NCBI GenBank assembly: GCA_950097015.1
Contig: CATNEN010000037.1
Span: forward strand, 3,720,001-3,784,000
Reading direction: 5' to 3'
Length of the DNA stretch: 64,000 bases
Origin: Macrostomum hystrix
Taxonomy: Eukaryota; Animalia; Platyhelminthes
The translations under genes were made by a program, and so were the position numbers. The notes beneath the pieces were generated by a model. The model was given only the letters and a program-made list of their open reading frames with translations, did not search any database and was not told where the DNA came from. Of the stretch, positions 24,161 to 42,459 are shown piece by piece (the stretch's first letter is position 1; every line of letters begins with the position of its first letter).

Positions 24161-25928
24161 ACCGCTGTGGGTTTTATAAATATAGCATGAAATCATAGTC
24201 TTACATTCGGAGTCTTCATTTTCATCTGGTGAAAAAAGTGTCAAATTGCCCAGAACTTTTTCATGATGCTGATCGATTTGTTGGAGCTGAAATGAATCAA
24301 TATAGAATATAACAAGCGCTACGGAGCTCCAAAAATTACGTGTACTTCGATCATAATGCGCAAATCTAAGTACGAGTATTATAGATTTATACTGCCTATT
24401 AGCACTTTAACTCTTGGGGTTTGTAATTTGAAGTGATTTCTGAATCGGGGTTCGTAGTGATTGTGTAATTTTTGAAAATTGAACGTATTCTTTCAAACTA
24501 TTGTTTTTTCGTTAAGTATGCAGGCATGGCGCTCTTAAATTTAATTTAAGGAACTTACGCAAGAGATAAAAATTACTAAGTAAAAAATTAATGGTACAGA
24601 CCAGTACGGCCTCCTCTCGATTGAGATACGCTCCTTTCTTAGATGAAGCCATCGTTTTAGGCTTCTGTAAAAAATGAACAAAATAACGCAAGTTAAAAGC
24701 TATTTGAGTTGTTTACTACAAATGAAAAAAAAATAAATCTTACAAATGAGGACCAAACCTAAAAATTGTAAGTTAAAAAATATATTTTTAAATTCAATAG
24801 CTAAAAAATCAATTCAATCGATGCTTGCTAACAAAAATTTAGTTTTAAACACAAATGACGCGGTAGTATTCCGGGTTAGCTAGGTTGATGAATTTAAAGA
24901 AGTCCGTTGCAAATTCGCAGATTCTCCCTTATGTCTATGACATCGCACCACAAACGAGCGACCATCGGGTGGTTCATCCTTTTATTTTGTGTGTATAAAT
25001 TAAGTTCTTTCTAAGAATCTTTACAATTAGATTTTATATGCTCACATGTTTATGCATGTATATGCTTAGTTATATGCTTATATGCATACATCGTGATATT
25101 ATTAAGCACCACTAGAAGAAGACCTTTTGATCTTCTTCTAGTAGTCCTTGTTTATTATTAATTCGGAATGCGTCTCGTCATTCTCGAGTTCTCGTGGAGA
25201 TTCGGAGTCGCTGCTAGGTCTAAGCTTCGACTCGAGATAGCTAGGTCTTAGCTGAAAAAGTGCATGCCTACTGTCTGCGACTTCAAAGCAGTAAGGATAA
25301 ATAAAAGACATATTTTTTAATTAAACGAGTAGCTACAGCTAATTGCTTGATCAAACTTAATTTGAAAGTAAACTGAATGTTAGAAAGTAAATTAGTGTTA
25401 GGTAATATCAGCATATTAAAGTTTCAACTCACAAACAATTAGATTTTACAATTGAGTAATCAACTGCTATATTACTTCTATATTGATTTTACCTTGAACT
25501 AATTTATATAATCACTTATATTTATAGCTAGGCTACAAAAAGATATAAATTTTCCTCTAGTTACTGAAAATCCATGTTTCATTATTATACTTATAGAACA
25601 TAATCAGCATGCTGAAGTTTTACCCACCCACTTATTTACTATTGGTTGTAGGCCTATCCTATGGACAAAATGTATTAACATTTTGGATAGTGAATAATTA
25701 TCATAGCCCACAAAGTTTTTCTTTTGGTCTTATGGCACATATTGGTACATCATGATGTATGTCGATCATGGGACAAAAATTGATGCATAGGCCTAGTGCG
25801 CATCAGCTAGTCATAGGGACTCAAGAGGGCTGGGCCTAGCCTAGGGAAGGCACTAGTCATAACTGGTATACAATAGTATTTTTACTTTGTGCATCTGCAC
25901 AAGGGAAAAATTTTTAATGCCTTCTAGT

Positions 25929-26370
25929 AGGTACCTGGACACTTTGTCATCTTACAACCTTGTCATCCAGATGACGATCTGTCCAATATCTCAGATGGTG
26001 GATGATGAAGAGACTTAGACTTGTGGACACTTCGTCATCTATAAAACAAAAGTTTTCAAAGTTAAAACAGAACCACCCCTCCCCACCCCTCCTCACATCA
26101 TGTTGGCACCTATCTTTCAACTCTTATAATGAAATCAGTTTTCACACCTCTTTTTGACAATTTAGAGTGTGAAGTGTGTTCACACCTCTGCCCCACCACC
26201 CCACCCTCACTTTATTGATGACAAACTTGATTGCTTGTTATTAGTAGATGACAAACTGACCAAACTTTAAAGCATGCCAATTGGCTGGATGACAAAGTGT
26301 CCTACCTTCCAAGTCGATGACAAGGTTGCAAGATGATGAAGTTGTAAGATGACAAAGTGTCTAGGATCCT
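25929..26370. mobile_element. MITE, 442 bp, with TIRs and subterminal TGTCATC/GATGACA repeats
   Basis: Left AGGTACCTGGACACTTTGTCATCTTACAAC; right end reverse complement AGGATCCTAGACACTTTGTCATCTTACAAC; direct repeat TTCTAGT at 25922-25928 and 26371-26377. Confidence 0.8.
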
Positions 26371-28463
26371 TTCTAGTACACACATGGTATGATCCTGACT
26401 ATAGCTCAAATAGGTAACTAAAAAGCCAATTAAGAGCCAATTTAGACTGAGCAGATCATTTAATTAGCTCAGTTGGATTGTTTTTATATTCGGCAAATAT
26501 ACAATCACCCAATTTTGGCAAAACAGTTATTATGTCTAAGCCAAGACTACTAGTATTAGCATAGTATGTCTCTATTATCTCTTATCACATTAGCTAGGGT
26601 AATGTATCATCAACCAAACAAGAATGTGTATTTTTTTAACTTCAAACCTAAGCTACAGATTTTCTATTTAAGATATGATGATAAATCAAAAGCCAAGTTA
26701 TAGAAAACAGTTACATCTTTCTAAAAAGTATCTGCTTTTGCTATTTTATCAAATAGAAAAAAGTTATTCCTGCTTTTTTTCTAAAACCGAACAATGATTT
26801 TCATGTATCTTCAAACCAAACAGAGAATTTGATGTTTGGTTTTAAAATTTGAGTGAGTGGTTTAATCTTATTTTAAGGAGTTAACTATCATGAATTATGT
26901 CATTTGAAGGCATTTTTCATGCTCTATAAATAACTACATTTATGGTCATTTAATTGGCAAGCAACCACATACAATCTTAGTCTAAAGTACATACTGAAAA
27001 AATGTTGTTAAAAAGTATGCTTTTGCAATAAAAAATTCTACTGAAACATCAATATCTTTCTTTCCTCTTAATGCTTCATTGCACATCATGCCTCAGCTTG
27101 TAGATAATTTCTTCAACTTTCAAATTAGTTGTTCTGTGAAACACAATAGCTTGTTTCTGTCTTGCATAAGACCAAGGAAGAAGTCAAAATTCTTGTTCGG
27201 TTTTGAAGATACACTGTTCGGTTGATGATACATTACCCTACTAAGAACTGGAATATATTATAGAGGCCAAATCATTTTTTACAGTATCAGTATCTATTAT
27301 ATATATATCATGTATAAGGTATACAACTATATGCTATAGCAGCCAATTTTTATCTGTCACCTTTTTATTGTTGCCCCTTTTAAGTGTTGCCTTTTTAATT
27401 TGTAGCCATTAAAATATTTGAGGATCTTGGATAGGACTGTCAGCTTTAAGTCATTAATTTGGCTAGGGTCTTATTTTTTTAGGATTGGTATTTTAATTGT
27501 GTCCAATCCTTACTTGCCTCTTGATGCTCAAGCTTGATTTTTAACTTCAGTAAACAATATTCTTTTTTATGCCCAGAGCATTGTTTTTTAAAGTGGGGAC
27601 CCTAAAAGGCTAGAATCTTTAAGAGATTCAAATTAGCAGTTATGATTTAATAGGCCTATAGTTTACAGTGTGGCTACTAGGCTAGTTATTCTTTAACTAT
27701 TCTGTCTATCTAAAAATTTATATTTTCTTGATTGAGAAAAGATGCTCAGCAATATTTGCCTTTTTTTATTCTATTGACCATTGCCATTAATTAAAAATTA
27801 AATATATGTACAGTTTTAGTTACTGGCAAGCACTACATCTGATAACCGTCAATATAAACTTGTTTTTTAATATATTCAGGCATTTCAGCATATTTTAGGT
27901 GCAAAAAATATTTTATGAAATGCTCATAGTTTATGATAGAAAGATATACAGAACAGAAAATATACAAGATTGTGTAAAACTGGTCTTCCATGATTCTTTC
28001 TGCTGTAGCTCTTAATTCGAACCAGAAATGTTTAGAATTCAAGTCATAATTTCTTTGTTGAGAAGTTTCATTTTGTTGGGCACAACCGTAGAAGCTGAAG
28101 TGTTGCTAATTTATTCAAATATTGGCCCATCTGCAAAAGTTAGGTTTTGTTTGTAAATTAATATGATTTTTGGGTGTTTATTGTTGCTGTTAAGGTTCAT
28201 CATTATCAAAGTGTGATTGTAACACAGTGGCTATCTCATTGTAAGCAAGTTTTTTAGGAGCCTAAAATTCCATAATATTTTTAATGAGCCCAGTAAATAG
28301 GTTATCCTAAGTGAAAGTAGTTATCCGAGCTAGTTTAGGTATAAGCATATGAAATTACATATTTCCACAATAGCGTTAGCACTATATTTTGTTAGTTAAC
28401 AAATAGTTGTTAAAATATTTACCATGTGTGTACTTGTTTCATTTTTAACTAATCGAATTTCAG

Positions 28464-29966
28464 GACAGTCCGCACAACACCAGCAAGCAGCAGCGGGAGC
28501 TGGAGCAGGCCGCCAGGCGGGCAGAGCGCGAGAGAAAACGCCTGGAAAAAGAGGCCGAGAAGCGGGCCAAAGAGGAGGAGCGGCTTAAGAAGGAGGAGGA
28601 GCGCCGGCTAAAAAAGGAAGAGGAGGCTCGCAAAAGAGACGAAGAACGAAAGGCCAAGGAGGAGGAGAAGAAGGCCAAGGAAGAAGAGAGAAAGGCCAAG
28701 GAAGAAGAGAAGGCCAAATTAAAAGAAGCAAAAGAAGAAGAGAAAAAAGCCAAAGAGGAAGAGAAGGCAAAGCTAAAAGAGGCAAAGGAGGAGGAGCGAA
28801 AGGCCAAAGAGGAGGAAAGGAAGGCCAAAGAGGATGAGAGGCTAAAGAAGATAGAGGAGGAGCGCCGGCAGAAGGAGAAGCAGGCCAGTCTCCTTGCTAG
28901 TTTCTTTATAAAAAAATCATCAGATAGGGCCCAATCGGAGGTCGGTGGTTCGGGTCAAACAGAAGAGGCCACAGCTGCGGATGACAAGCGCCGATTCATG
29001 CCGTTTCCGTTGCGTAAGGACGCTCGCCTCTGTCCGATTATTCGCCGCGAGCCGATGACAGAGGCTGAACGGGAAAAGCTTGAGCAGTACTTAATTGACG
29101 ATGCGAATCCAGAGCCTCAGTCCATTCTTACCGAGCTGAAGCATCGCAGAGGCCGCACCTGCGCCCAGACCTGGCCGCTTAAGGAATTTCTACAGGGTGG
29201 CGCCGATGCCGACATTGTCATGGTAGCCGAGACGACGCCTTCGCTGCGCAAATGCAAGCTGCTGCAGTTCTGCGAGAATCACCGGCCAGCCTATTACGGC
29301 ACCTGGACTAAGCGTAGCCGAGCCATCACCGGGCGTACCCCATTGAGCATAGACTCAAACTCGCTAAACTACGATGTCGATAGTGAGGCCGAATGGGAAG
29401 AAGAAGGCGAGGGCGAAGATCTCGATGCTTCCGAGGGCGGCGACCTCGAGGAGGCCGGCGACGAGGATGAGGACGAAGAAGAGGCGGCCGCGTTTGTGGT
29501 ACCGCACGGATACCTGAGCGATGACGAGGGCGAGAACGTCGCCGAAGATAATGCCGAGGATGACGCTGAGGATGCCGAGACCCGCAAAAAGCGGCAACTG
29601 CTCCGCCAGCGAGCCTTCGAGGAGAGTCAACTAAAGAAGGTGCAGCGCCTCAGGCCGATTTTAATCGGTATCAGTTTCAGCGAGCTAGCCGAGATTGCCG
29701 AGGAGGCGGCCTTCTGCTGCCACGAGCCGCTGCCGATTGATTGCGACCCGCCGCCGGCGCCTCCGCCTTCTAGCCAGCCTGCGACGCCGGACGAAGCCGG
29801 CCGGAAGCGACAGGGCTCCGCTAAGCGCGCCCGCGCCGGCTCCAGCTCGGGTCAGCAGCAGGGCGCCTCCCCAGCCACCGCCGAGTCGGCCAAGAAGAAG
29901 CGTCGCCCCATCACCGACTTCTTTCAGTCGCCGTCTTCGGAGAAGAAGCTTCCTGTACAAAATTAG
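28464..29966 (+). CDS. CHAF1A: Chromatin assembly factor 1 subunit A (p150)
   Basis: Open frame of 500 codons from acceptor TTTCAG at 28463: KER coiled coil, PIP-like QASLLASFF, KLLQFCENHRPAYYGTW, YDVDSEAEWEE, acidic domain, FVVPHGYLSDDEG. No in-frame ATG before 28998. Confidence 0.92.
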   Translation, partial: DSPHNTSKQQRELEQAARRAERERKRLEKEAEKRAKEEERLKKEEERRLKKEEEARKRDEERKAKEEEKKAKEEERKAKEEEKAKLKEAKEEEKKAKEEEKAKLKEAKEEERKAKEEERKAKEDERLKKIEEERRQKEKQASLLASFFIKKSSDRAQSEVGGSGQTEEATAADDKRRFMPFPLRKDARLCPIIRREPMTEAEREKLEQYLIDDANPEPQSILTELKHRRGRTCAQTWPLKEFLQGGADADIVMVAETTPSLRKCKLLQFCENHRPAYYGTWTKRSRAITGRTPLSIDSNSLNYDVDSEAEWEEEGEGEDLDASEGGDLEEAGDEDEDEEEAAAFVVPHGYLSDDEGENVAEDNAEDDAEDAETRKKRQLLRQRAFEESQLKKVQRLRPILIGISFSELAEIAEEAAFCCHEPLPIDCDPPPAPPPSSQPATPDEAGRKRQGSAKRARAGSSSGQQQGASPATAESAKKKRRPITDFFQSPSSEKKLPVQN

Positions 29967-32896
29967 CTGGCCGGTGTTTTAATTGCGTCAGTTTTGCGTG
30001 TCTAATGCAACAAGTCGAATAGTTTTTTAATGGAATTTCATTCGGCGCGACTTGTCTAAGTTAATAAAGCCAAGCAAAGTGATCGCGACTCATCATTTGT
30101 TGGGTATTGGTCATGCATGCATTATGTACAAATTTGGTGTTTTTTCTATTTTTACAATATTGGTTACTTCAAGTAGTATTCTTGAAGAATTTGACGCTCG
30201 ACGCATTTGAAGTTTTGCCCCGAACGTAGTTCGACGTTCAGGTTTGTCGCATTTGAAATTTTTGACCCAGTCATCATTATTAATCTTATTACTTCTAGTG
30301 AAACGCGTGACTGATTGGTTACCTTTTTCAATGTAATCTTAGAGGCTGATACTTTGAGTTGGGTTTAGTAAAGTATTGCATAAAATATTCTGCTATTATA
30401 GTAACGAGATACCATAAGGTTAATCGAGTAGCGAATGATTGGTAATTGGTAAGTCCTGTTAATTCCTATATCTAACACACGCAATGAATATATTTCTTAA
30501 CTGTAGATGATGTCGTTTAGTAAACTGTGAGGAAGAACTTGTGGTTAAAGCAAAAATGATTCGCTTTAATGTGATTTGTTTTAAGTGGCATGTTGATAAC
30601 TTATATGTTCTTAGTTGCAACAACATTGCATGAAATATGAAGCAACGCCCTGCTGTTTAAATATATCTTAATAATTTCAATCTGAAGTTAGTAATTTTAT
30701 TATAATCATTAATCTGATTCTGAAACTTTCAAACTCCTTTGGTTATGATGTACTGTGTTTCATTTTTATTTATACTGCATAGCTCGTTACTCTACAACGC
30801 TAGTCTTTCTAGTTTCGTATTCTAGCGAGTGGACAGACGTCCTTGGATTTCATTTTGTGAATCGTCTCAACTTCAATATTTTTTACGGGTCAAAATTATA
30901 ATTCGCCGCATATGACTTATACACGAAATTATTGCGCTAATGAAGTCAAATAACTTCTATCGGCATGTCAGCCGTAAGCTATATCAGCCATTAGTACTTT
31001 AAGTAATATAATATTACACGTTTGACTAGTAAGTATTATGTTTATCGTTTAAAACAGAAGCAAACTACTCTTTTTGGTTAGTCTTATCTGTAGTAGATCT
31101 GCGTGTTATTTCCGAATTGTCAGTGCTCTAACCTCATCACATGAGCAAGCGCTTAAATAAGATGTCATGTTAAAAGCAACGATTCGATATTCTGCCTCAC
31201 TCTCGTTGGTGCCTAGTAGATTATCCACCTGTTTCCCAAACCTCAATTGAGTTTCTTTATAAATTCATTCGGAAAGGTTAGTCAGAGAAAATTACTATTT
31301 CAAAAATGATTCCGTAATACTTTCGGCTTCGGGACAAATGAAAAACAGTTCCTTGCCTAACATCGGGATAAACGAATTCTGTTTGCACTTTCCGTTTTAA
31401 TTTGAAATTTAGTTACTCCGCTTAATTTATTGTATCAGGTGCCAGTATCTTCTATACAACTTTACTCGCAATTATTTCTCCTTAAATAGTAACAGTCGGA
31501 TTGCTACTTATAATCAGTCACTAAACAATCATTAATAACTGCTGATTAGAAATCTAAAAACTAGGCTTATAGTAACTATCAAGATAACAGACATTACTTT
31601 GTATTTAATGACACATGTATTGCATTGTATACCTAGTCCTAGCATGCTTGCTCATTTTGCAGCTTTTAATTCATGTCCCTAACTATGTACCTAAAGGATG
31701 GGATGGAACATGGTTTAAATATGTTCCTATAAACCATGTGTTGTTGGATAATAATATAAAAATAAAAATATGTAATATAAAAATCATGATAACATGATGA
31801 TGATAAAATCATGATATATGTTTTTTTGCTTATCACACTAAATTGAATCTCTCAGATGTTCTGCAAATTTCCTGTATAAATCCTAAAATATCAGTAAATT
31901 TAGCCTGACATCAATCTAGCGTTATAGATAATTGGTGCAAATGCCTCAAATATGGCATATTTCTTATCAACTAGGGGGCCTATATCATTCATCTTAGTTT
32001 TTTAATTAACAAATCAATTACTTTAATTTAAGTTTAAAGTTACTTTCTTTAAACTTTAAGTTTAAATTTTAATATTAATATAAAGTTTACTTTCATTATT
32101 AGGCCTAGTTTCAATGAAAGACATGTTCTCTAACTATGTACAAGTTAATCAAAGCTTTCAGTTTCTTTTTTAGTATTAAAGTCTTAGGCCTATTGTCTTA
32201 GTCTTAGTATTTAGACCTTATTGCCATGGTTTTAATGTAGAAAATACAATATCCAATAGGTCTAGTCTTCTGTGCCAATAAGCAGGCCTTGTTGCTGAGC
32301 ACTGTAGCAATAGGCCTAGTCTAATTCTAATTCTTTCAAGCAAGAAGATTCTCTAGCTATAAAAATATGATTGCTTATTTCTCTAGCTGACAAAATCTAG
32401 TTTTATCTAGGTGTGAAATCCTAGTTTTATATATTTATTTTATTTATTTATTTAAATTTATTTTTATTTATTTAATTTCTTTTAATTATTTATTTATGCG
32501 ATTTTGGACTATTACTTGGGTGTTGGTTTGGGATCAGATATTTTTTTTATTCAGTTACAACAAATTGGGTTTCTGGTCAGTTATCTAGAAAATCTATAAA
32601 AAGAGTTTCAGAATTTGGCAATATTATTCTTTAAATCCAATAGTTTTTACCATTTTATTTCCTTAAAGTAGGGGTTCTATTAACTGAAAAAATGTTTCCT
32701 TAAAAAAGGAAATTAAAATAAAAGTTGTTACATGTTAATAAAAATTTGAGGCAAAAATATTATGCTCAATTGTGACTGTCACACAGCTAATTTTTTAAAG
32801 TAATTTTACTAGTTGAGAATCAACAGAAGCTGACTATAAAGATAAAAGAAATAACCATTGAATTTCATCTCTTTATAAATAAAAATAATTTTTGGG

Positions 32897-33210
32897 GAAG
32901 GGCTGCATGGAATGACACATCATTTAGTGACACTAGACATGTAGCCAGCAAGGAAGCAATTCTGCCCATTTTGCTGAATCCTTTGCACACAGGCACACAC
33001 TCACACAGATGTGTACATCTGCCCTGACTTTCTTGTTGTCACATAGTGTATACTCTCACTGTGCCTTGGAGGTTGGCCCTCAAGGGCGTTAATAGCACAA
33101 CAAGCCCCCAAGCCTTCTTTGTGCCTCAAATAAATGTGACCTTGCCGCAGAATCAAACTCAGGGACCTTGGCATGAGAAGCAAAGGCATTAACTGCTCTG
33201 CCATTGACCC
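32897..33210 (-). mobile_element. SINE family A, CpG-decayed copy
   Basis: Colinear with 4428-4790, with most CG changed to TG or CA. Confidence 0.88.
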
Positions 33211-33437
33211 TGTAATTTCAGCTGTTTTTGTGTACCTATAAATTGTGAAAGTCTTGTTAAGTTTGACCAAAATAGGCCAGAATTCAGGGCATAACATAAC
33301 TAATCCCTTTCATTTTTCTGAAAATTTAGTAATAATAAAGTGCAACTTGTTAATGTACATGTTGATGTTGGTTACAAAATAGGCTAAGTATTTACTATAC
33401 ATAGTGTGTGTTAATCCACAACAAAACTGATTTGCAG

Positions 33438-33770
33438 ATGCTGCGCACTCTTGTCCGACCAATCAGCTGCCTGTCTGGGGCTGCCACTAATCCTCTAGTA
33501 GCCTTCACCAGACCCCTGGCTGCCGCCGCCTCCTCGCCCAGCGATCCCATCCAGAAGTTGTTCGTTGAAAAGATTCGCGAATACAAGAAGAAGCAGTCCG
33601 GTGCCAAGGACGGCCTAGTCGACGCTACGCCGGAGTCGTTGCGCGAGTTCAACGACATGCTCGAACGCGTCGAGCGTCAGTTCGAAGCCAAAGGGCAGGA
33701 CATGACCAGCTTTCCGAAGTTCGAATTCAAGGATCCTGTTCTGCAAAATCCTAGCGCTTCGAGCCGTTGA
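33438..33770 (+). CDS. ATP5PF: Mitochondrial ATP synthase coupling factor 6
   Basis: DPIQKLFVEKIREY...FPKFEFKDP; basic N-terminal presequence; ATG directly follows acceptor TTTGCAG. Confidence 0.93.
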   Translation: MLRTLVRPISCLSGAATNPLVAFTRPLAAAASSPSDPIQKLFVEKIREYKKKQSGAKDGLVDATPESLREFNDMLERVERQFEAKGQDMTSFPKFEFKDPVLQNPSASSR

Positions 33771-34234
33771 GAAATGGCGTTAGAACTCTATGAACTGAAA
33801 ACTGTACTAGATTTAATATGGCAACAGTAGTAACACTAACAAAGCGTCACTTTAGTACAACCATAGTAGTGTTTTTTATCTAATTAAATATTAATCCACT
33901 TCTTAGACAACCTTGAAATGATTAGTGATTCAAGAATATTAAGTATATTTAATACGACACAGGGCTATAAAATATATACACTAAACAGAGTGTTTAGTTA
34001 ATCGGAGCTGTACATCTCTCTGTCAGACCGTGGTGCGATTGACAGCTCGCTAGTTACTTGTTCATTGCGCTTTTTAATTCCTTTTCGCAACTTCGATTAG
34101 AGCTACACGTTCACATGTTTAGAGTTTAGAGATTAGACGAAACGATTAGAGTTTCCTTAGTTTGAAATCTGCGCAAACCCCGTGTTGCTGTGGCACCCAT
34201 TGTATGCTACAATATCTATCAATCAATCACCAGT

Positions 34235-35275
34235 TACCTTGATCTATCCCACAGTAACCTTGATCTATCCCCCAGTTACCTTGATCTATCCCCCAGTTAC
34301 TTTGATCTATCCCCAGTTAATTTGAACTATACCCCAGTAACCTTGATCTATCCTTCAGTTACCTTGATCTATCCCCCAGTTACCTTGATCTATCCCACAG
34401 TTACCTTGATCTATCCCCCAGTTACTTTGATCTATCCCCCAGTTACTTTGAACTATACCCCAGTTACCTTGATCTATCTCCCAGTTACCTTGATCTATCC
34501 CCCAGTTACTTTTATCTATCGCCCCGTTACCTTGATCTACCCCCAGTTACCTTGATCTATCCCCCAGTTACTTTGATCTATCCCCCAGTTACTTTGAACT
34601 ATACCCCAGTTACCTTGATCTATCTCCCAGTTACCTTGATCTATCCCCCAGTTACTTTTATCTATCGCCCCGTTACCTTGATCTACCCCCAGTTACCTTG
34701 ATCTATCCCCCAGTTACCTTGATCTATCCCCCAGTTACCTTGATCCATCCCCCAGTTACTTTGAACTATACCCCAGAAACCTTGATCTATACCCCAGTTA
34801 CCTTGATCTATCCCCCAGTTACCTTGATCTATCCCCAGTTACTTTGATCTATCCCCAGTTACTTTGATCTATCCCCAGTTACTTTGATCTATCCCCCAGT
34901 TACCCTGATCTATCCCCAGTAACCTTGATCTATCCCCAGTTAATTTGAACTATACCCCAGTAACCTTGATCTATCCCCAGTTACTTTGATCTATCCCCAG
35001 TTACTTTGATCTATCCCCAGTTACTTTGATCTATCCCCCAGTTACCCTGATCTATCCCCAGTTACCTTGATCTATCCCCAGTTAATTTGAACTATACCCC
35101 AGTAACCTTGATCTATCCCACAGTTACCTTGATCTATCCCCCAGTAACCTTGATCTATCCCCCAGTTACTTTGATCTATCCCCAGTTAATTTGAACTATA
35201 CCCCAGTTACCTTGATCTATCCCCCAGTTACTTTGATCTATCCCCAGTTACTTTGATCTATCCCCAGTTACCATG
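34235..35275. repeat. 20-21-bp minisatellite (CCCAGTTACCTTGATCTATCC)
   Basis: About 50 units between ATP5PF and the EXOSC10 acceptor. Confidence 0.96.
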
Positions 35276-35362
35276 ATTTAGTCTGCAGTTTTGTTAGAGT
35301 ATTTTCAGTCACCTTAGCCTGATATATTGATTTTCCTTGCCACTTTTGCCACCCATTTGCAG

Positions 35363-38300
35363 AGCGCACCAGGCAAAGAGGGCGCGGACTGCGTGCCCAA
35401 GCTCATAGCCACCATGCGGCTCTCCAATGAGCTGCCGGCTAGGGGCACGAGTTACGATTATTACAGCAGTTTTCCCGCATTTCGCGCCCTAATGGACGCT
35501 CAGTCGTCTAAACTGTTGTTCATGATGCAGCGGCTAATAAATTACGAGGTGGGTGTTAAATATAGGTCTGTCTTTAAAAAAGGCAAAGCAGAGAAATCTA
35601 ACAGAAATTCTCTAAATTGTTGTCATTTGTTCTTCCATGATAATGTTTCAACTCCCTGTGTAAACAATATTGTACATTCTTAAGCCTTTACTTCAAGCTT
35701 GTGCATCCTCGGACTTGTGCTTTTACATAGAACATTTACATCCTCAAGCTTGTACACCCTCAAGCTTGTACATCCACAAGCTTGTACATCCACAAGCTTT
35801 TACATACTTAAGCTTGTACATCCTCAAGCTTGTACATCCTCAAGCTTGTACATCCTCAAGCTTGTACATCCTCAAGCTTGTACATCCTCAACTTGTAACT
35901 GTGCATCCTGCATCCTGTAACTTGTGCATCCTTAAAACTGTAGGTAGATAATAAGTTACCTAATAACAAATGCAAATTAGTACATCATTAAACTTGAACG
36001 TCTTGAAAAACTTAAAAAACTTATTTTCAAACAGGGCGGCGCCGGCTCAGTCATCAGCGGCCAAGTCAACAGAGACTTTGACGATCGCTTCGAATCGATG
36101 ATTGAAGTCAACGACGAACTCTTAGAACGAGTTGGCGCTGCTTTGGATGTTCACGAACGTGGACAACAGCCTGCTGCTGCTGCTGCTGCAACTGTTGCTG
36201 CTTCAGATACCACTGCAAAAAAGCAGCAGCCATCTTCTAAGCCTTCGACAACGTCTCAGTCTAGTAGTTCAACCGCGTCATCGGCTGCCGCCATCCGATT
36301 CTTGGCGTCCCGCATCTCCGCCCGGCCGCAGGACCAGTTCGGCCTCAAGCCGGACAATTCAACCGCCCCGTTTCGTTGTCGGCTTCGCTTTAAGCACAAT
36401 TCTCTGACGCCAAATAGTAATAAGGATGTGCCGCTTCAGCAGCAGCAGGAACATCCCTACGGCCCAGAGCTGGACGCATTCGTGCCTGAGGAGCGCTTTC
36501 TAGGAAATTGCCTACAGCCGCAGCAGGAGCCTCCGCCGCCGCCGCATCTATTAAATGACGCCGAGTTAACGCTAGTTCAAACAGCTGACGACCTGGCCGA
36601 ATTACTGGCTGTGCTAGACGGCGAAGCAGAATTGGCCGTGGATTTGGAAGCGCACAGTTATCGAACCTATCTTGGCATTACCTGTCTTATTCAGGTATTT
36701 ACTAATAAATTCCGGTCCATACTTACACATAATAGAAATCAAAGTTGCTTTCTGTAAAATTATAAGATCGGCTAGAAAAAGAAACATCTTCGCTTTTTTT
36801 CTACTGCTAGTAGTACAAAGCAAAATTTTATCTCACTTTCGCTTTTATTTTCAGATTTCCACTCGCGCTCAGGATTTCATAGTCGACACTCTGCGACTCT
36901 GGGATCGCATCTGGGAATTGAATCGCGTCTTTACTAATCCCAAGATTCTAAAAGTACTGCACGGTTCGTCTGGTGATTTGGCCTGGTTGCAGCGCGATTT
37001 CGGCATCTACATGGTGAACCTGTTCGACACCTACCTGGCCTCGCACACCCTGGCAATGCCGCGTCACTCACTTGCCCACCTGGTGCACACCTATTGCGGC
37101 TTCACCTTGGATAAACAGTTTCAATTGGCCGATTGGCGTGTTCGTCCCCTGCCAGTTGAAATGCTTCGCTATGCCAGGTGCGACACTCGCTACCTGCTCT
37201 ATATTGCCGATAGGATGCGGGCCGACCTCTGGCAGCGAGCTGAAGGCCGGCCCGACCTTGTCCTGCGAGTGTTTGAAGCCTCCGGCAGGCTGTGCCGAGA
37301 GCTGTACAGGAAGCCAATTCTAGGGCCGGAGGATTATCGACAATTGCTAGCTAAGTCTAGGAAGGCGTTTAACTCCGGCCAGCTGCACGCATTGGAACGA
37401 CTGTACGCCTGGCGCGATGCCACGGCCAGGATGGAGGACGAGAGTCCTGCCTTTGTACTGCCTGATCACATGCTGCTATCTGTGTGCGACTTGCTTCCAA
37501 GGTTAGTACCAATTCACTTCTATTCAGGAATATATACAAACCTAGTGGCTAGAGCGCCGGACTCACCTAAAGAAGGTCCGGGGTTCGATTCCCGACTCCA
37601 CTGAAACAATTTGTGTCCGGTCCTTTAGCCAGACACTTAATTCCGCGTTGCTTCAGTTCACCCAGTTGTTAAATGGGTACAAGTACTAGCTGGGGTAATT
37701 GACGATGGATGTGGCGTCCCCCAGTCCATGGACTGAACGCAGCCTTCAGATCCGTCGCACAATAAATTAGGAACAGGTTTTTTCATATATATTTAGGAAC
37801 ATATTGGCATTCGGATATTGAAAAGGTGCATTTGTGCATTCCAGAGAGTTCACTGGCATCCTAGCCTGCTGCAATCCTGTGCCGCCCCTAGTACGCAAAT
37901 ATGTGCACGATTTGCATCGGATTGTGCTAGAGGCTCGCGAACTTCGGTCCACAGACCCAGCCGGGCGCCAGTCAGTTGGCGGCTCATCGTCAGCTCCAAC
38001 TGTTGCCGCTGTTGAACAGTCGCCGCTGAGGCAGCTGCCGATACACCGCTGTCCGCACGACATTTCTCATTTCACAGCTGACGATTTCGCCTGCCCCTCG
38101 CCGCCACCGTCGCCGCAGTCGGCAAAGAAGTCGCTAACTTGGAAAGCTGTGCCAACTGTTCAGTGCCTTGACCAGCGATCCAACGAAACTGTTGACAAAG
38201 AATTTTATGCCAAGCTACAGTCTGTTCTCAGCCGTCTGGTCAGTCCGTTCTATGCGGTGCCGCCTCAGCCAGAGGCCTATTTTATTGTCAAAGCCAATCA

Positions 38301-38664
38301 GCTGGACGATGAAGCCGACGATGCTGACGAAGCTTCAACAGCGGCCCCCGCTGAGCCAGATGATCAGACGGATATTCCAACAGGCAGGGAGACGCCATTC
38401 TTGATGCCAACCCAGCGGAAGCAGCGAAAGCCGCGAGCGTCTAGATCCGCAGCCGCTGCTGCCGCAGATGACCCAGACAATGACGAGGCCGAGGCAGCCG
38501 AGCCGGAACCCGCTTTCGACTACCAGCGGGCCGCAGTTGAACTAGCCAGCCGAGCTATGGACCGATTCCCAATTAGGGATCCATTGAATCTAATTGGTGG
38601 CAAACGACGCGGCGGCGGCGGGGGCAGTCGGCTGGCCAAGTTTCGTAGAAAGCAGAACTTCTGA
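35363..38664 (+). CDS. EXOSC10: Exosome component 10 (Rrp6), DEDD-Y exonuclease with HRDC domain
   Basis: Exons 35363-35548, 36035-36694, 36855-37501, 37845-38664 in frame. PMC2NT-like DYYSSFPAF; AVDLEAHSYRTYLG; HGSSGDL; YARCDTRYLL; ACCNPVPPLVR. Confidence 0.95.
35695..35925. repeat. 16-bp minisatellite (CCTCAAGCTTGTACAT) in EXOSC10 intron 1
   Basis: About 13 units. Confidence 0.9.
37540..37770 (+). mobile_element. SINE family B in EXOSC10 intron 3
   Basis: CCTAGTGG...GGTTCGATTCCCGACTCCACTGAAACAAT...CAGTCCATGGACTG matches the 3929 copy. Confidence 0.88.
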
Positions 38665-39042
38665 GATGACAATGTTCAGTCTTTTTAGTGTTGCTAGCTG
38701 ACTTTGTCATCGATATAAAATACAAGCAAATTACAATGCTACAATATATAATGTTGTTCACTGGTATGAATTCTAGAACATCCTGTGCTTGCTTTGTGAC
38801 AAATAAAAGCATTTCATAATTTTCATTGAAATTTTCGACTTTACTGGATTCCCACTATTTTTACTGGATTTTTGGTTAAGGCATTCGTCAAGGTTAATAT
38901 AACGAGCCTCCGTAATGTTACTTTTTTACTTTAAGGACTAATTACTTTCTAGAAATAAGGATTTTCTGTGTCATCGATTTGGTATTTTTTTATTCTACAG
39001 TCTTTTTAAATTCCGTCATTTTCAGCGTTTACCCGCTTGGCA

Positions 39043-42000
39043 ATGCCGTATCCAATGCAATCTACCGTACTGGTCATGCTACTAGCCACCTACCCTGTGG
39101 CCTGGTGTCTCAACTGCAGCGAATTCAACAAAACACATAATGGGGTACTGGCACCGCTCTTTGGATGGAAGTGAGCGGCTTCGTAGTTATCCTTTTTCTA
39201 TTCCTTCACCAACGGGATTAACTAGCAATCCATTCTACTCACTCATCCATGGTATAGACTAGCAATCCATTCTACTCACTCATCCATGGTATAGACTAGC
39301 AACCCATTCTACTCACCCATCCATGGTATAGACTAGCAATCCATTCTACTCACCCATCCATGGTATAGACTGGCAATCCATTCTACTCACTCATCCATGG
39401 TATAGACTAGCAATCCATTCTACTCACTCATCCATGGTATAGACTGGCAATCCATTCTACTCACTCATCCATGGTATAGACTAGCAATCCATTCTACTCA
39501 CTCATCCATGGTATAGACTAGCAATCCATTCTACTCACTCATCCATGGTATAGACTAGCAACCCATTCTACTCACCCATCCATGGTATAGACTAGCAATA
39601 CATTCTACTCACCCATCCATGGTATAGACTAGCAATCCATTCTACTCACTCATCCATGGTATAGACTAGCAATCCATTCTACTCACTCATCCATGGTATA
39701 GACTGGCAATCCATTCTACTCACTCATCCATGGTATAGACTAGCAATCCATTCTACTCACTCATCCATGGTATAGACTAGCAACCCATTCTACTCACCCA
39801 TCCATGGTATAGACTAGCAATCCATTCTACTCACCCATCCATGGTATAGACTGGCAATCCATTCTACTCACTCATCCATGGTATAGACTAGCAATCCATT
39901 CTACTCACCCATCCATGGTATAGACTGGCAATCCATTCTACTCACTCATCCATGGTATAGACTAGCAATCCATTCTACTCACTCATCCATGGTATAGACT
40001 AGCAATCCATTCTACTCACTCATCCATGGTATAGACTAGCAACCCATTCTACTCACCCATCCATGGTATAGACTAGCAATACATTCTACTCACCCATCCA
40101 TGGTATAGACTAGCAATCCATTCTACTCACTCATCCATGGTATAGACTAGCAATCCATTCTACTCACTCATCCATGGTATAGACTAGCAACCCATTCTAC
40201 TCACCCATCCATGGTATAGACTAGCAATACATTCTACTCACCCATCCATGGTATAGACTAGCAATCCATTCTACTCACTCATCCATGGTATAGACTAGCA
40301 ATCCATTCTACTCACTCATCCATGGTATAGACTAGCAATCCATTCTACTCACTCATCCATGGTATAGACTAGCAATCCATTCTACTCACTCATCCATGGT
40401 ATAGACTAGCAATCCATTCTACTCACCCATCCATGGTATAGACTAGCAATCCATTCTACTCACTCATCCATGGTATAGACTAGCAATCCATTCTACTCAC
40501 TCATCCATGGTATAGACTAGCAATCCATTCTACTCACCCATCCATGGTATAGACTAGCAATCCATTCTACTCACTCATCCATGGTATAGACTAGCAATCC
40601 ATTCTACTCACTCATCCATGGTATAGACTAGCAATCCATTCTACTCACTCATCCATGGTATAGACTAGCAATCCATTCTACTCACCCATCCATGGTATAG
40701 ACTAGCAATCCATTCTACTCACTCATCCATGGTATAGACTAGCAACCCATTCTACTCACTCATCCATGGTATAGACTAGCAATCCATTCTACTCACTCAT
40801 CCATGGTATAGACTAGCAATCCATTCTACTCACTCATCCATGGTATAGACTAGCAACCCATTCTACTCACTCATCCATGGTATAGACTAGCAACCCATTC
40901 TACTCACTCATCCATGGTATAGACTGGCAATCCATTCTACTCACTCATCCATGGTATAGACTGGCAATCCATTCTACTCACTCATCCATGGTATAGACTA
41001 GCAACCCATTCTACTCACTCATCCATGGTATAGACTGGCAATCCATTCTACTCACTCATCCATGGTATAGACTAGCAATCCATTCTACTCACTCATCCAT
41101 GGTATAGACTGGCAATCCATTCTACTCACTCATCCATGGTATAGACTAGCAATCCATTCTACTCACTCATCCATGGTATAGACTAGCAATCCATTCTACT
41201 CACCCATCCATGGTATAGACTAGCAATCCATTCTACTCACCCATCCATGGTATAGACTAGCAATCCATTCTACTCACTCATCCATGGTATAGACTAGCAA
41301 TCCATTCTACTCACCCATCCATGGTATAGACTAGCAATCCATTCTACTCACCCATCCATGGTATAGACTAGCAATCCATTCTACTCACTCATCCATGGTA
41401 TAGACTAGCAATCCATTCTACTCACTCATCCATGGTATAGACTAGCAATCCATTCTACTCACCCATCCATGGTATAGACTAGCAATCCATTCTACTCACT
41501 CATCCATGGTATAGACTAGCAATCCATTCTACTCACCCATCCATGGTATCGACTAGCAATCCATTTTCACCCGTGGCCCGCAGAATCCAGGTGGACACAG
41601 CCAGTGGCCAGAAGCTAGTCATCAGTGTCTGCTCCCCAATCGGCATGTTCAGCAGCAGCTTAGCTGACGCGGCCGCAGCCTTGATCCCCATATCGCAGTC
41701 GGGTGATGTCGGCGTCCCGGTGATTCTTGGCCAAGCACAAACCGCTCAATTGTTCGTTGGCACCGGCTGGCTTCTGCTGGTGTACACTGGCGGGGATTCC
41801 TACTCGGACTTGCCGTGTACCGGCCAGCGCAGTGCTCGCATTGTGATGGAGTGCAATCCGGGCGCCTACGCGCCCATCCTGGATTTTATAGGCGAGGTTC
41901 GCAACGAATCAAACAGGTGTCACCATCTGTTTGGCCTGCAGCACTATACCCTGTGCGGTCTCGTGCCAGATCCCAGCTCTTCCGGTGTCAATCTGACACC

Positions 42001-42301
42001 CGTGGCCATTGTCATTGTATCCATTCTGGCCTTATTCTGCGCCTACCTGGCTATCGGCATGCTGATTCAGCGATTCTATTTCGGCCGACGGGGCGCGGCC
42101 CAGATACCGAACTACACCGCCTGGCAACGATTCGGAAATGCGGCTGCTAGCTGCTGCGATCTGGTCTGTCGCAGCGAGCCTAGGCCTTCCCGCAATCGCT
42201 TTGCTGATGCTGTCAACGATCAGGATAGCGCTAGCGGCGCCGGTGTCACCACGCATCACCTGTACGCCGACCTAGACGACGATCACCTGCTGCCGGCTTG
42301 A
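39043..42301 (+). CDS. M6PR: Cation-dependent mannose-6-phosphate receptor-like type I membrane protein, 281 aa
   Basis: Exons 39043-39170 (signal peptide) and 41584-42301, phase 2. MRH-type YTGGD...C...RSARIVMECN; TM helix; tail RFYFGRRGAAQIPNY...W...DDHLLP. Confidence 0.85.
39215..41565. repeat. 37-bp minisatellite (GACTAGCAATCCATTCTACTCACTCATCCATGGTATA) filling the M6PR intron
   Basis: About 63 highly homogeneous units. Confidence 0.98.
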
Positions 42302-42459
42302 GCATTAGGGTTTCCTTGCTTTATTAATAAAAACCTTTATTGATTGATACCTTTTTAAAACTAGAAATCACTTTTGTTTAACGCGCTAGTCTACCCTTTT
42401 CGCCGAGGTGTAGCGGTTTTACCAGCGACGTGAAAATTGGTTTGTGCCAAATCCCAAGC

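What the first reader, a model, noticed from the sequence alone, without database searches (positions are those of the whole stretch)
28464..35416. CHAF1A and EXOSC10 lack their own start codon; a spliced leader may supply the AUG
Seen: CHAF1A opens at TTTCAG|GAC AGT CCG (28464) with no in-frame ATG until 28998, which would delete the KER domain and PIP-like motif; I found no upstream coding exon in the AT-rich 24700-28460 interval. EXOSC10 opens at TTTGCAG|AGC GCA CCA (35363), 17 codons before its first ATG. Both acceptors are phase 0, so an added AUG gives MDSPHN... and MSAPGK.... Established: flatworm spliced leaders end in AUG, and its use as initiator was shown in Schistosoma. Inference: both genes depend on trans-splicing for their start codon.
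Basis: partly seen in the sequence, partly recalled or inferred. Interest (0 to 1): 0.75.

Follow-up and report, generated by a model that had tools for sequence, protein, structure and literature searches.

The report
Leader-supplied start codons for two flatworm genes
In this Macrostomum flatworm the genes for chromatin assembly factor CHAF1A and exosome nuclease EXOSC10 have no start codon of their own at the front of their conserved coding sequence, and most likely borrow the AUG that ends the trans-spliced leader, which is a known flatworm habit and not a new mechanism.

Summary
CHAF1A opens at TTTCAG|GAC (28464). An in-frame TAA lies six codons upstream, and the first in-frame ATG comes 178 codons in. 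EXOSC10 opens at TTGCAG|AGC (35363), with an in-frame TAG 16 codons upstream and its first ATG 17 codons in.

The genome is a Macrostomum species other than M. lignano. Published Macrostomum spliced leaders end in ATG.

The support is therefore comparative:
- Against M. lignano, similarity starts abruptly at both acceptors.
- The 171 alignable CHAF1A codons before the first ATG have dN/dS 0.044.
- The EXOSC10 codons before its ATG encode the conserved first helix of the PMC2NT domain.
- Every RNA-guided M. lignano model of both genes is 5'-partial and starts at or five codons after the same acceptor.
- Phase 0 is kept in both species despite a 6-nt indel in EXOSC10.

Some M. lignano contigs carry ATG in place of the acceptor CAG. 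The assembly was polished with RNA-seq, so this is probably an imprint of leader-bearing reads.

The mechanism is known from Schistosoma. This scan has already reported it for other genes of the same genome (RFC4, TOP3A, cardiolipin synthase). Interest is modest.

The parts
28446..28448 (+). In-frame TAA stop upstream of the CHAF1A acceptor; no ATG between it and 28464
28458..28463 (+). TTTCAG: proposed trans-splice acceptor of CHAF1A, phase 0. It fits the [T/C]TNCAG motif, with a CTAAT branch-like site about 14 nt upstream
   Evidence: motif from PMC8629364; same slot as CAG in M. lignano L002-L004
28464..29966 (+). CHAF1A, one coding exon of 500 codons plus stop. With the leader AUG the protein reads M-DSPHN... 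(501 aa)
   Evidence: Pfam CAF1A_acidic and CAF1A_dimeriz; 73% identical to M. lignano PAA75377.1; same C-terminus ...KKLPVQN
28998..29000 (+). First in-frame genomic ATG of CHAF1A (codon 179). Weak context cgattcATGc; two out-of-frame ATGs come before it
33432..33770 (+). ATP5PF (ATP synthase factor 6) gene. A TTGCAG acceptor (33432-33437) abuts the gene's own ATG (33438), so a leader AUG would be in frame (MM...). The CDS runs to the stop at 33770
   Evidence: same CAG|ATG arrangement in M. lignano
34230..35277 (.). Tandem array of a 21-bp unit, 50.7 copies, filling most of the ATP5PF-EXOSC10 spacer
35315..35317 (+). In-frame TAG upstream of the EXOSC10 acceptor; no ATG between it and 35363
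35357..35362 (+). TTGCAG: proposed trans-splice acceptor of EXOSC10, phase 0, preceded by a long pyrimidine tract
   Evidence: motif from PMC8629364; orthologous acceptor in M. lignano
35363..35551 (+). EXOSC10 exon 1 (63 codons, PMC2NT first half). With the leader AUG the protein reads M-SAPGKEGADCVPK...
   Evidence: Pfam PMC2NT; human EXOSC10 alignment from residue 13; 90% identical to M. lignano PAA69410.1
35414..35416 (+). First genomic ATG of EXOSC10 (codon 18) in a strong Kozak-like context gccaccATGc. It lies inside conserved helix 1 of PMC2NT
36035..36694 (+). EXOSC10 exon 2 (end of PMC2NT, linker, start of the exonuclease domain)
36855..37501 (+). EXOSC10 exon 3 (3'-5' exonuclease domain, start of HRDC)
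37845..38664 (+). EXOSC10 exon 4 (rest of HRDC, C-terminal tail, stop)
39020..39045 (+). Next gene on the same strand (mannose-6-phosphate receptor family). A TTTCAG acceptor (39020-39025) lies 17 nt before the gene's own ATG (39043), so a leader AUG would be out of frame here. This is a counter-example within the same cluster
   Evidence: M. lignano counterpart

Best explanation
Both pre-mRNAs are trans-spliced to the Macrostomum spliced leader, at the AG ending at 28463 (CHAF1A) and the AG ending at 35362 (EXOSC10). The leader ends in ...GCAUG, so its last three bases land directly in front of codon 2 and in phase 0. They serve as the initiator, giving M-DSPHN... (501 aa) and M-SAPGKEG... 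(about 772 aa by summing exon lengths).

CHAF1A has a divergently oriented upstream neighbour. It must therefore have its own promoter and an outron somewhere in 24.7-28.46 kb.

EXOSC10 lies in a same-strand run, ATP5PF - EXOSC10 - mannose-6-phosphate receptor. Repeat-adjusted spacers there are about 0.5 and 0.36 kb. It may be an internal gene of a polycistron, for which trans-splicing is needed anyway.

Shown here:
- the acceptors, their phase, and the lack of any genomic ATG;
- that the codons before the first ATG are coding;
- that the arrangement is conserved in M. lignano.

Inferred:
- that the leader is actually joined at these two sites in this species;
- that ribosomes start at the leader AUG;
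- operon membership.
For: 1. Sequence facts.
2. The M. lignano leader is the published 35-nt sequence ending TTGCATG. Leaders of M. cliftonense and M. hystrix also end in ATG, and the trans-splice acceptor motif is [T/C]TNCAG (PMC8629364, PMC10468722). Both sites fit that motif.
3. CHAF1A: nucleotide identity to five M. lignano copies jumps from about 0.5 in the 150 nt before the acceptor to 0.84 in the 150 nt after it. dN/dS is 0.044 over the 171 alignable codons before the first ATG, with dS about 1.9. Three M. lignano copies carry TTCCAG|GCC AGT CCG CAC AAC at the same slot.
4. All five NCBI M. lignano CHAF1A models and both EXOSC10 models are flagged partial and lack a start codon. P0122 and P0126 begin at the first base after the acceptor slot; the others begin five codons later. 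Those gene boundaries were cut at sites where leader-bearing reads mapped (TBONE; PMC5730564).
5. EXOSC10: the 11 codons before the ATG read GADCVPKLIA[T/S] in both species, with two synonymous changes. The acceptor-to-ATG distance is 51 nt here and 57 nt in M. lignano, so phase 0 survives a 6-nt indel. These residues align to the conserved first helix of PMC2NT in human EXOSC10 and four other homologues, and the window's Met18 falls inside that helix.
6. Some M. lignano contigs carry ATG in place of the acceptor CAG of CHAF1A, EXOSC10 and the next gene. The assembly was Pilon-polished with RNA-seq. This is best read as an imprint of RNA carrying ...CATG joined at exactly these junctions.
7. 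No upstream exon is visible: no block conserved with M. lignano and no GC-rich island in 24720-28463, and no phase-0 ATG...|GT[AG]AG candidate upstream of EXOSC10.
Against:
- Exact and word look-ups found no transcript-derived protein of this species.
- A very short cis 5' exon ending in ATG would escape the conservation and GC tests. Two chance-level candidates with good donors exist upstream of CHAF1A (25264-25290 and 26317-26343).
- The leader AUG has a weak context (U at -3), while EXOSC10 Met18 sits in gccaccATG. Some or much EXOSC10 translation could therefore start at 35414.
- The first 6-8 EXOSC10 codons after the acceptor are not conserved between the species.
- Reading the M. lignano ATG sites as an RNA imprint is my inference from the published methods, not a demonstrated fact.
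Confidence: 0.8

Rival explanations
1. A cis-spliced 5' exon somewhere upstream carries the ATG (alone or with a few codons) and is joined to these same acceptors. The genes would then have ordinary genome-encoded starts that the reader and I failed to see.
For: - 72 phase-0 ATG...|GT candidates exist in 24717-28463, two of them with GT[AG]AG donors.
- In parasitic flatworms acceptors are often shared between cis- and trans-splicing (PMC12582326).
- CHAF1A proteins of other flatworms are about 300 aa longer.
Against: - Nothing between 24720 and 28463 is conserved with M. lignano by blastn at word size 7 or by tblastx.
- That interval has no GC-rich island.
- No strong-donor candidate exists upstream of EXOSC10, where a 1-kb tandem array fills the spacer.
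- The RNA-guided M. lignano models of both genes, seven in all, have no upstream coding exon and are 5'-partial at or near the acceptor.
Confidence: 0.08
2. Translation starts at the first genomic ATG (28998 for CHAF1A, 35414 for EXOSC10). The open frame upstream would be an untranslated leader that stays open by chance or through nucleotide-level constraint.
For: - EXOSC10 Met18 has a near-perfect Kozak context (gccaccATGc), and the M. lignano orthologue keeps an A at -3.
- 17 open codons are not improbable by chance.
- The first 6-8 EXOSC10 codons are not conserved.
Against: - CHAF1A: dN/dS is 0.044 over 171 upstream codons. They contain the Pfam CAF1A_acidic domain. Two out-of-frame ATGs block scanning to a weak-context ATG.
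- EXOSC10: the upstream residues are conserved as protein and align to helix 1 of PMC2NT in human and other homologues, where the position of Met18 is an internal residue.
- At most this reading holds as a second, shorter EXOSC10 isoform.
Confidence: 0.07
3. Assembly or base-call error in the window: a genuine genomic ATG has been misread as CAG at one or both sites.
For: In the syntenic M. lignano contigs the same slots read ATG.
Against: - Both window sites are canonical acceptors with pyrimidine tracts.
- Three other M. lignano CHAF1A contigs, and an independent older M. lignano annotation of EXOSC10 (its protein reads ...TFQ|GEPT, so CAG), show CAG.
- The same CAG/ATG swap occurs at the next gene, where ATG is out of frame. 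That points to an artefact on the M. lignano side, whose assembly was polished with RNA-seq.
Confidence: 0.02

Closest known systems
Schistosoma mansoni mRNAs that take their initiator Met from the 3'-terminal AUG of the spliced leader (Cheng, Cohen, Ndegwa & Davis 2006, J Biol Chem 281:733; not held, known to me through PMC9851317 and PMC12582326)
   Same: The flatworm leader ends in AUG. The acceptor is in phase with an ORF that has no genomic ATG. The leader AUG is required for the correct N-terminus. PMC9851317 summarises that work as finding the leader AUG in frame with 28% of trans-spliced transcripts, and more than 40 cDNAs that need it.
   Different: The host here is a free-living macrostomorph, not a parasite, and the genes differ.
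Trans-spliced genes of Macrostomum lignano / M. cliftonense / M. hystrix (Wudarski 2017 PMC5730564; Ustyantsev & Berezikov 2021 PMC8629364; the 2023 M. cliftonense / M. hystrix genome paper PMC10468722)
   Same: Same genus, the same leader ending in ATG, and the same acceptor motif [T/C]TNCAG. Conserved, stem-cell-related genes are enriched among trans-spliced genes, and CHAF1A and EXOSC10 fit that class. PMC10468722 states that the final ATG is likely the translation start codon.
   Different: The passages I read (term searches in all three papers plus the Results of PMC8629364) do not list or discuss genes that lack their own ATG. The M. lignano orthologues are simply deposited as 'partial' hypothetical proteins.
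Other start-codon-less genes reported by this scan in the same genome (RFC4, TOP3A, cardiolipin synthase; RHBDD1 10.6 kb upstream of this window)
   Same: The frame opens at a phase-0 acceptor with no ATG. Follow-up notes say RNA assemblies showed the leader joined there.
   Different: Those are AI notes that I did not re-test. For the present two genes no reads could be laid.

Membership tests
Flatworm genes initiated at the spliced-leader AUG | The organism's spliced leader ends in AUG | tested here: met
   Met by literature only. The M. lignano leader ends ...TTGCATG (PMC8629364), and leaders of M. cliftonense and M. hystrix also end in ATG (PMC10468722). The genus was assigned from 73% protein identity to M. 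lignano CHAF1A. No leader gene lies in the window.
Flatworm genes initiated at the spliced-leader AUG | The first coding exon begins at an AG acceptor of trans-splice type, in phase 0 with the ORF | tested here: met
   TTTCAG|GAC at 28464 and TTGCAG|AGC at 35363. Both fit [T/C]TNCAG. Phase 0 is also kept in M. lignano.
Flatworm genes initiated at the spliced-leader AUG | No genomic in-frame ATG upstream of coding sequence that is demonstrably translated | tested here: met
   In-frame stops at 28446 and 35315, with no ATG before the acceptors. CHAF1A dN/dS before the first ATG is 0.044. EXOSC10 residues before the ATG align to PMC2NT helix 1.
Flatworm genes initiated at the spliced-leader AUG | RNA molecules with the leader joined at that acceptor | not testable with these tools
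Indirect evidence comes only from M. lignano: 5'-partial models cut at trans-splice peaks, and an ATG imprint at the acceptors.
Flatworm genes initiated at the spliced-leader AUG | Translation actually starts at the leader AUG | not testable with these tools
   Needs ribosome profiling, N-terminal proteomics or a reporter assay.
CHAF1A (CAF-1 p150) | KER/acidic region plus the p150 dimerisation domain | tested here: met
   PF11600 (E 7.6e-9) and PF12253 (E 1.5e-25), both above gathering score. Orthologues across animals.
EXOSC10 / Rrp6 | PMC2NT, DEDD 3'-5' exonuclease and HRDC domains in that order | tested here: met
   Tested exon by exon. PF08066 in exons 1-2, PF01612 in exons 2-3 (E 2.5e-36), PF00570 in exon 3. 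Human EXOSC10 chains matched.
Macrostomum operon (polycistron resolved by the spliced leader) | Same-strand neighbours with repeat-adjusted spacing of 1 kb or less, and trans-spliced downstream genes (criterion of PMC8629364) | tested here: inconclusive
   From the ATP5PF stop to the EXOSC10 acceptor is 1593 nt, of which 1048 nt is tandem repeat. From the EXOSC10 stop to the next acceptor is about 360 nt. In M. lignano the spacers are 833 and 462 nt. The spacing criterion is met, but neither a polycistronic RNA nor trans-splicing was shown. CHAF1A is not in an operon: 3.4 kb separates it from ATP5PF, and its upstream neighbour is on the other strand.

The most novel reading that the evidence does not exclude
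The ATG that replaces the acceptor CAG in some M. lignano contigs (CHAF1A, EXOSC10 and the next gene) may be real DNA and not a polishing artefact. Trans-spliced mRNAs would then have been copied back into the genome by reverse transcription and short-tract conversion, writing the leader's AUG into the gene. Leader-donated and genome-encoded start codons would toggle at the same codon slot within one genus.
Probability: 0.07. Interest if true: 0.75.

Novelty: new member of a known kind. Interest (0 to 1): 0.3.

Why it matters
**Annotation.** Gene finders that require a genomic ATG will truncate such genes or mark them 'partial'. The M. lignano orthologues of both genes are deposited that way. 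A CHAF1A model started at 28998 would lose its whole KER domain.

**Biology.** Synthesis of a replication-coupled histone chaperone, and of the full-length nuclear exosome nuclease, would be tied to trans-splicing. This arrangement has been kept between two Macrostomum species whose synonymous sites are saturated. The published enrichment of trans-splicing among conserved, stem-cell-related genes fits this.

**Scale.** These are two more instances of a mechanism known since 2006, not a new principle.

**By-product.** The likely RNA-seq polishing imprint (CAG rewritten as ATG at trans-splice acceptors) in the Mlig_3_7 reference is a practical warning for users of that assembly.

Tried and rejected
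- **Transcript-derived proteins of this species.**
  - The word search with CHAF1A found only M. lignano at 73% identity.
  - The word search with EXOSC10 exon 1 found nothing. That is partly a length-filter effect.
  - The exact look-up of the ATP5PF product found nothing.
  - I did not look up the M-prefixed proteins, because they are not encoded as such in the window.
- **Leader sequence in the window.** No match with up to 3 mismatches. Rfam and tRNA scans of the window were also empty.
- **M. lignano supplementary tables.** I looked for trans-splice calls for the orthologous gene ids. None are held as text.
- **Cheng et al. 2006.** Not in the library. I cite it only through papers that summarise it.
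- **M. lignano ATG as a real start codon.** I first read the ATG at the CHAF1A slot as a real genomic start that confirms the N-terminus. I gave this up for three reasons:
  - The same CAG/ATG swap turned up at EXOSC10 and at an out-of-frame site of the next gene.
  - The methods of PMC5730564 show RNA-seq polishing.
  - The swap is the only one of its kind in about 20 kb of aligned homeologous sequence.
- **Synteny shortcut.** The CAG-bearing CHAF1A copies of M. lignano (L008-L010) lie in a different gene neighbourhood, so they gave no second EXOSC10 copy.
- **Joined EXOSC10 protein.** I neither built nor searched it. Exons were searched one by one, by reference.
- **Third word search.** Left unused, because no Macrostomum RNA-derived protein had appeared in the earlier searches.


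Full report
**What is in the sequence**

CHAF1A:
- On the + strand the sequence reads ...aatcgaaTTTCAG|GAC AGT CCG CAC AAC..., with the exon starting at 28464.
- The same frame holds a TAA at 28446-28448 and no ATG between it and the AG.
- The frame then runs 500 codons to the stop at 29966, and its first ATG is codon 179 (28998).
- Pfam places CAF1A_acidic at residues 50-187 and CAF1A_dimeriz at 265-336.
- Two out-of-frame ATGs (28834, 28981) come before the weak-context ATG at 28998.

EXOSC10:
- The sequence reads ...cacccatTTGCAG|AGC GCA CCA GGC..., with the exon starting at 35363.
- An in-frame TAG lies at 35315-35317, with no ATG before the AG.
- The first ATG is at 35414 (codon 18).
- I placed four coding exons: 35363-35551, 36035-36694, 36855-37501 and 37845-38664.
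- They come from splice signals, tblastn with the M. lignano protein, and exon-by-exon Pfam hits to PMC2NT, DNA_pol_A_exo1 and HRDC.

**Organism and background**

- The best CHAF1A hit is Macrostomum lignano at 73% protein identity. CDS nucleotide identity is about 74%.
- The window therefore comes from another Macrostomum species. Notes of this scan say the same.
- The published M. lignano spliced leader is 35 nt and ends ...TTGCATG. The top motif at its trans-splice acceptors is [T/C]TNCAG (PMC8629364).
- Leaders of M. cliftonense and M. hystrix are highly conserved with it. The authors note that the final ATG is likely a translation start codon (PMC10468722).
- All reported parasitic-flatworm leaders end in ATG (PMC12582326).
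- Cheng et al. 2006 is summarised as finding the leader AUG in frame with 28% of trans-spliced S. mansoni transcripts, and required by more than 40 cDNAs (PMC9851317).
- Both window acceptors, and the one in front of ATP5PF, fit the motif.

**CHAF1A, comparative evidence**

- I fetched five M. lignano genomic copies (L001-L005).
- Global identity to the window is about 0.5 in each 150-300-nt bin upstream of the acceptor. It is 0.84 in the first 150 nt downstream. Conservation therefore starts at the AG.
- Over the 171 alignable codons before the first ATG, dN/dS is 0.044 with dS about 1.9. After the ATG it is 0.073. The upstream part is translated.
- L002, L003 and L004 read TTCCAG|GCC AGT CCG CAC AAC at the same slot.
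- All NCBI models are 'partial' and lack a start codon. One (PAA75395.1) begins ASPHN..., at the first base after the AG.
- The Mlig_3_7 gene boundaries were cut where leader-bearing reads mapped after trimming (TBONE; PMC5730564). A 5'-partial CDS starting at the acceptor is what a trans-spliced gene without an ATG should look like in that annotation.
- Upstream of the window gene, the last block conserved with M. lignano (up to about 24716) belongs to a gene on the minus strand.
- Between 24720 and 28463 I found no conserved block at blastn word size 7 or by tblastx. GC stays at or below 0.45, against 0.5-0.6 in exons.
- A scan for phase-0 ATG...|GT exons gives 72 chance candidates there. 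Two have good donors. A tiny cis exon therefore cannot be excluded from sequence alone.

**EXOSC10, comparative evidence**

- The word search with exon 1 was blank. Candidates must be 0.55-1.75 times the query length, so full-length relatives of a 63-aa query were out of range. I then used the exhaustive search.
- It returned M. lignano PAA69410.1, 'partial', 90% identical, beginning GEPTANRTGADCVPKLIASMRLSNELP. The window reads SAPGKEGADCVPKLIATMRLSNELP.
- A second NCBI copy is also partial.
- The 11 codons before the ATG are identical at 10 of 11 residues between the species, with two synonymous changes.
- The first 6-8 codons are not conserved.
- The acceptor-to-ATG distance is 51 nt in the window and 57 nt in M. 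lignano, so phase 0 survives a 6-nt indel.
- The alignment to human EXOSC10 starts at residue 13 of the exon.
- In an alignment with four more distant homologues, CVPKLIATMRLSN lines up with the conserved first helix (...LRxLLxATKxSN). Met18 takes the place of an internal residue. A start at 35414 would cut that helix.
- Against exclusive use of the leader AUG: Met18 sits in gccaccATGc, a near-ideal context, while the leader AUG has U at -3. A shorter second isoform by leaky scanning is plausible.

**An unexpected feature of the M. lignano reference**

- In L001 and L005 the CHAF1A slot reads TTCATG|GCC instead of TTCCAG|GCC.
- In L006 and L007 (the same two contigs) the EXOSC10 slot reads TTCATG|GGC. 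A UniRef protein from an older M. lignano annotation reads ...TFQ|GEPT there, so CAG.
- At the next gene (mannose-6-phosphate receptor family), L006 has TTCCAG|CC and L007 has TTCATG|CC. That is the only CAG/ATG swap in about 20 kb of L006-L007 alignment.
- At this third site the ATG is out of frame with the ORF, so selection for a start codon cannot explain the swap.
- The assembly was polished with Pilon using Illumina DNA reads and RNA-seq mapped by STAR (PMC5730564). All three sites have C at -4, as the leader does (...GCATG).
- My reading is that leader-bearing RNA reads overwrote CAG with ATG. This is an inference.
- If it is right, it is an artefact that also records RNA with ...CATG joined at exactly these junctions in M. 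lignano.
- If it is wrong and the ATGs are real, they still mark the same codon slot as the start of both proteins.

**Context**

- The gene order CHAF1A - ATP5PF - EXOSC10 - M6P-receptor-like - xanthine dehydrogenase is the same in the window and in M. lignano.
- ATP5PF has an acceptor that abuts its own ATG in both species (TTGCAG|ATG here, TTCCAG|ATG there). A leader AUG there would be in frame and add one Met.
- The receptor gene has a TTTCAG acceptor at 39020-39025, 17 nt before its own ATG at 39043. There the leader AUG would open a short overlapping out-of-frame ORF.
- The cluster therefore shows the three possible relations of leader AUG to ORF side by side.
- Spacers are 1593 nt from ATP5PF to EXOSC10 and about 360 nt from EXOSC10 to the next acceptor. 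Of the 1593 nt, 1048 nt is a 21-bp tandem array.
- Both spacers meet the repeat-adjusted 1-kb operon criterion of PMC8629364. I have no RNA to show a polycistron.

**What could not be done**

- No transcript-derived protein of this species is in the protein collections I could query.
- The key statement, that the leader is joined at 28464 and 35363 in this species, therefore remains inferred.

**Verdict**

It is very likely for CHAF1A. For EXOSC10 it is likely for the full-length protein, with a possible shorter isoform from 35414.
- The rivals are a cryptic cis exon (0.08), internal ATGs only (0.07) and a window base error (0.02).
- The mechanism is known. Follow-up notes of this scan report it, with RNA support, for RFC4, TOP3A and cardiolipin synthase in the same genome. 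I did not re-test those.
- These are new members of a known kind, of modest interest.

Noticed in passing
L001 5983-5985, L005 (same slot), L006 9998-10000, L007 9983-9985 and 14784-14786, against L002 5998-6000 and L006 14632-14634: In the M. lignano reference Mlig_3_7, ATG stands in place of the acceptor CAG at three neighbouring trans-splice sites on some contigs. At one of them the ATG is out of frame with the ORF. The assembly was Pilon-polished with RNA-seq, so leader-bearing reads probably overwrote the acceptor. Users of that assembly may see false genomic start codons and missing acceptors.
   Followed up: partly
window 33432-33440: ATP5PF has a TTGCAG acceptor directly abutting its own ATG, and M. 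lignano has the same arrangement. A leader AUG would be in frame and give a Met-Met N-terminus.
   Followed up: partly
window 33438-42303: ATP5PF, EXOSC10 and a mannose-6-phosphate-receptor-like gene lie on the same strand, each behind a [T/C]TNCAG acceptor. Repeat-adjusted spacers are about 0.5 and 0.36 kb, and M. lignano is syntenic (833 and 462 nt). This is a candidate operon.
   Followed up: partly
window 34230-35277 and 35737-35897: A 21-bp tandem array (50.7 copies, 88% matches) ends 85 nt before the EXOSC10 acceptor. A 16-bp array (10 copies) lies in EXOSC10 intron 1. M. lignano has different pyrimidine-rich repeats at the corresponding place.
   Followed up: no
window 39020-39045: The receptor-like gene's acceptor lies 17 nt before its own ATG (20 nt in M. 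lignano). A leader AUG would open a 20-codon out-of-frame ORF overlapping the real start. This is a local counter-example to use of the leader AUG.
   Followed up: no
window 28464-29966: Macrostomum CHAF1A is short (501 aa, against about 700-950 aa in other animals) and encoded in one exon. It starts right at the KER domain and lacks the N-terminal p150 regions (PF15539 and PF15557 are seen in other hits).
   Followed up: no
L008-L010, against L001/L005: M. lignano holds CHAF1A in two different gene neighbourhoods. One is syntenic with the window. The other lies between a Myb-domain gene and a Prp19-like gene, which suggests a duplicated and relocated copy.
   Followed up: no
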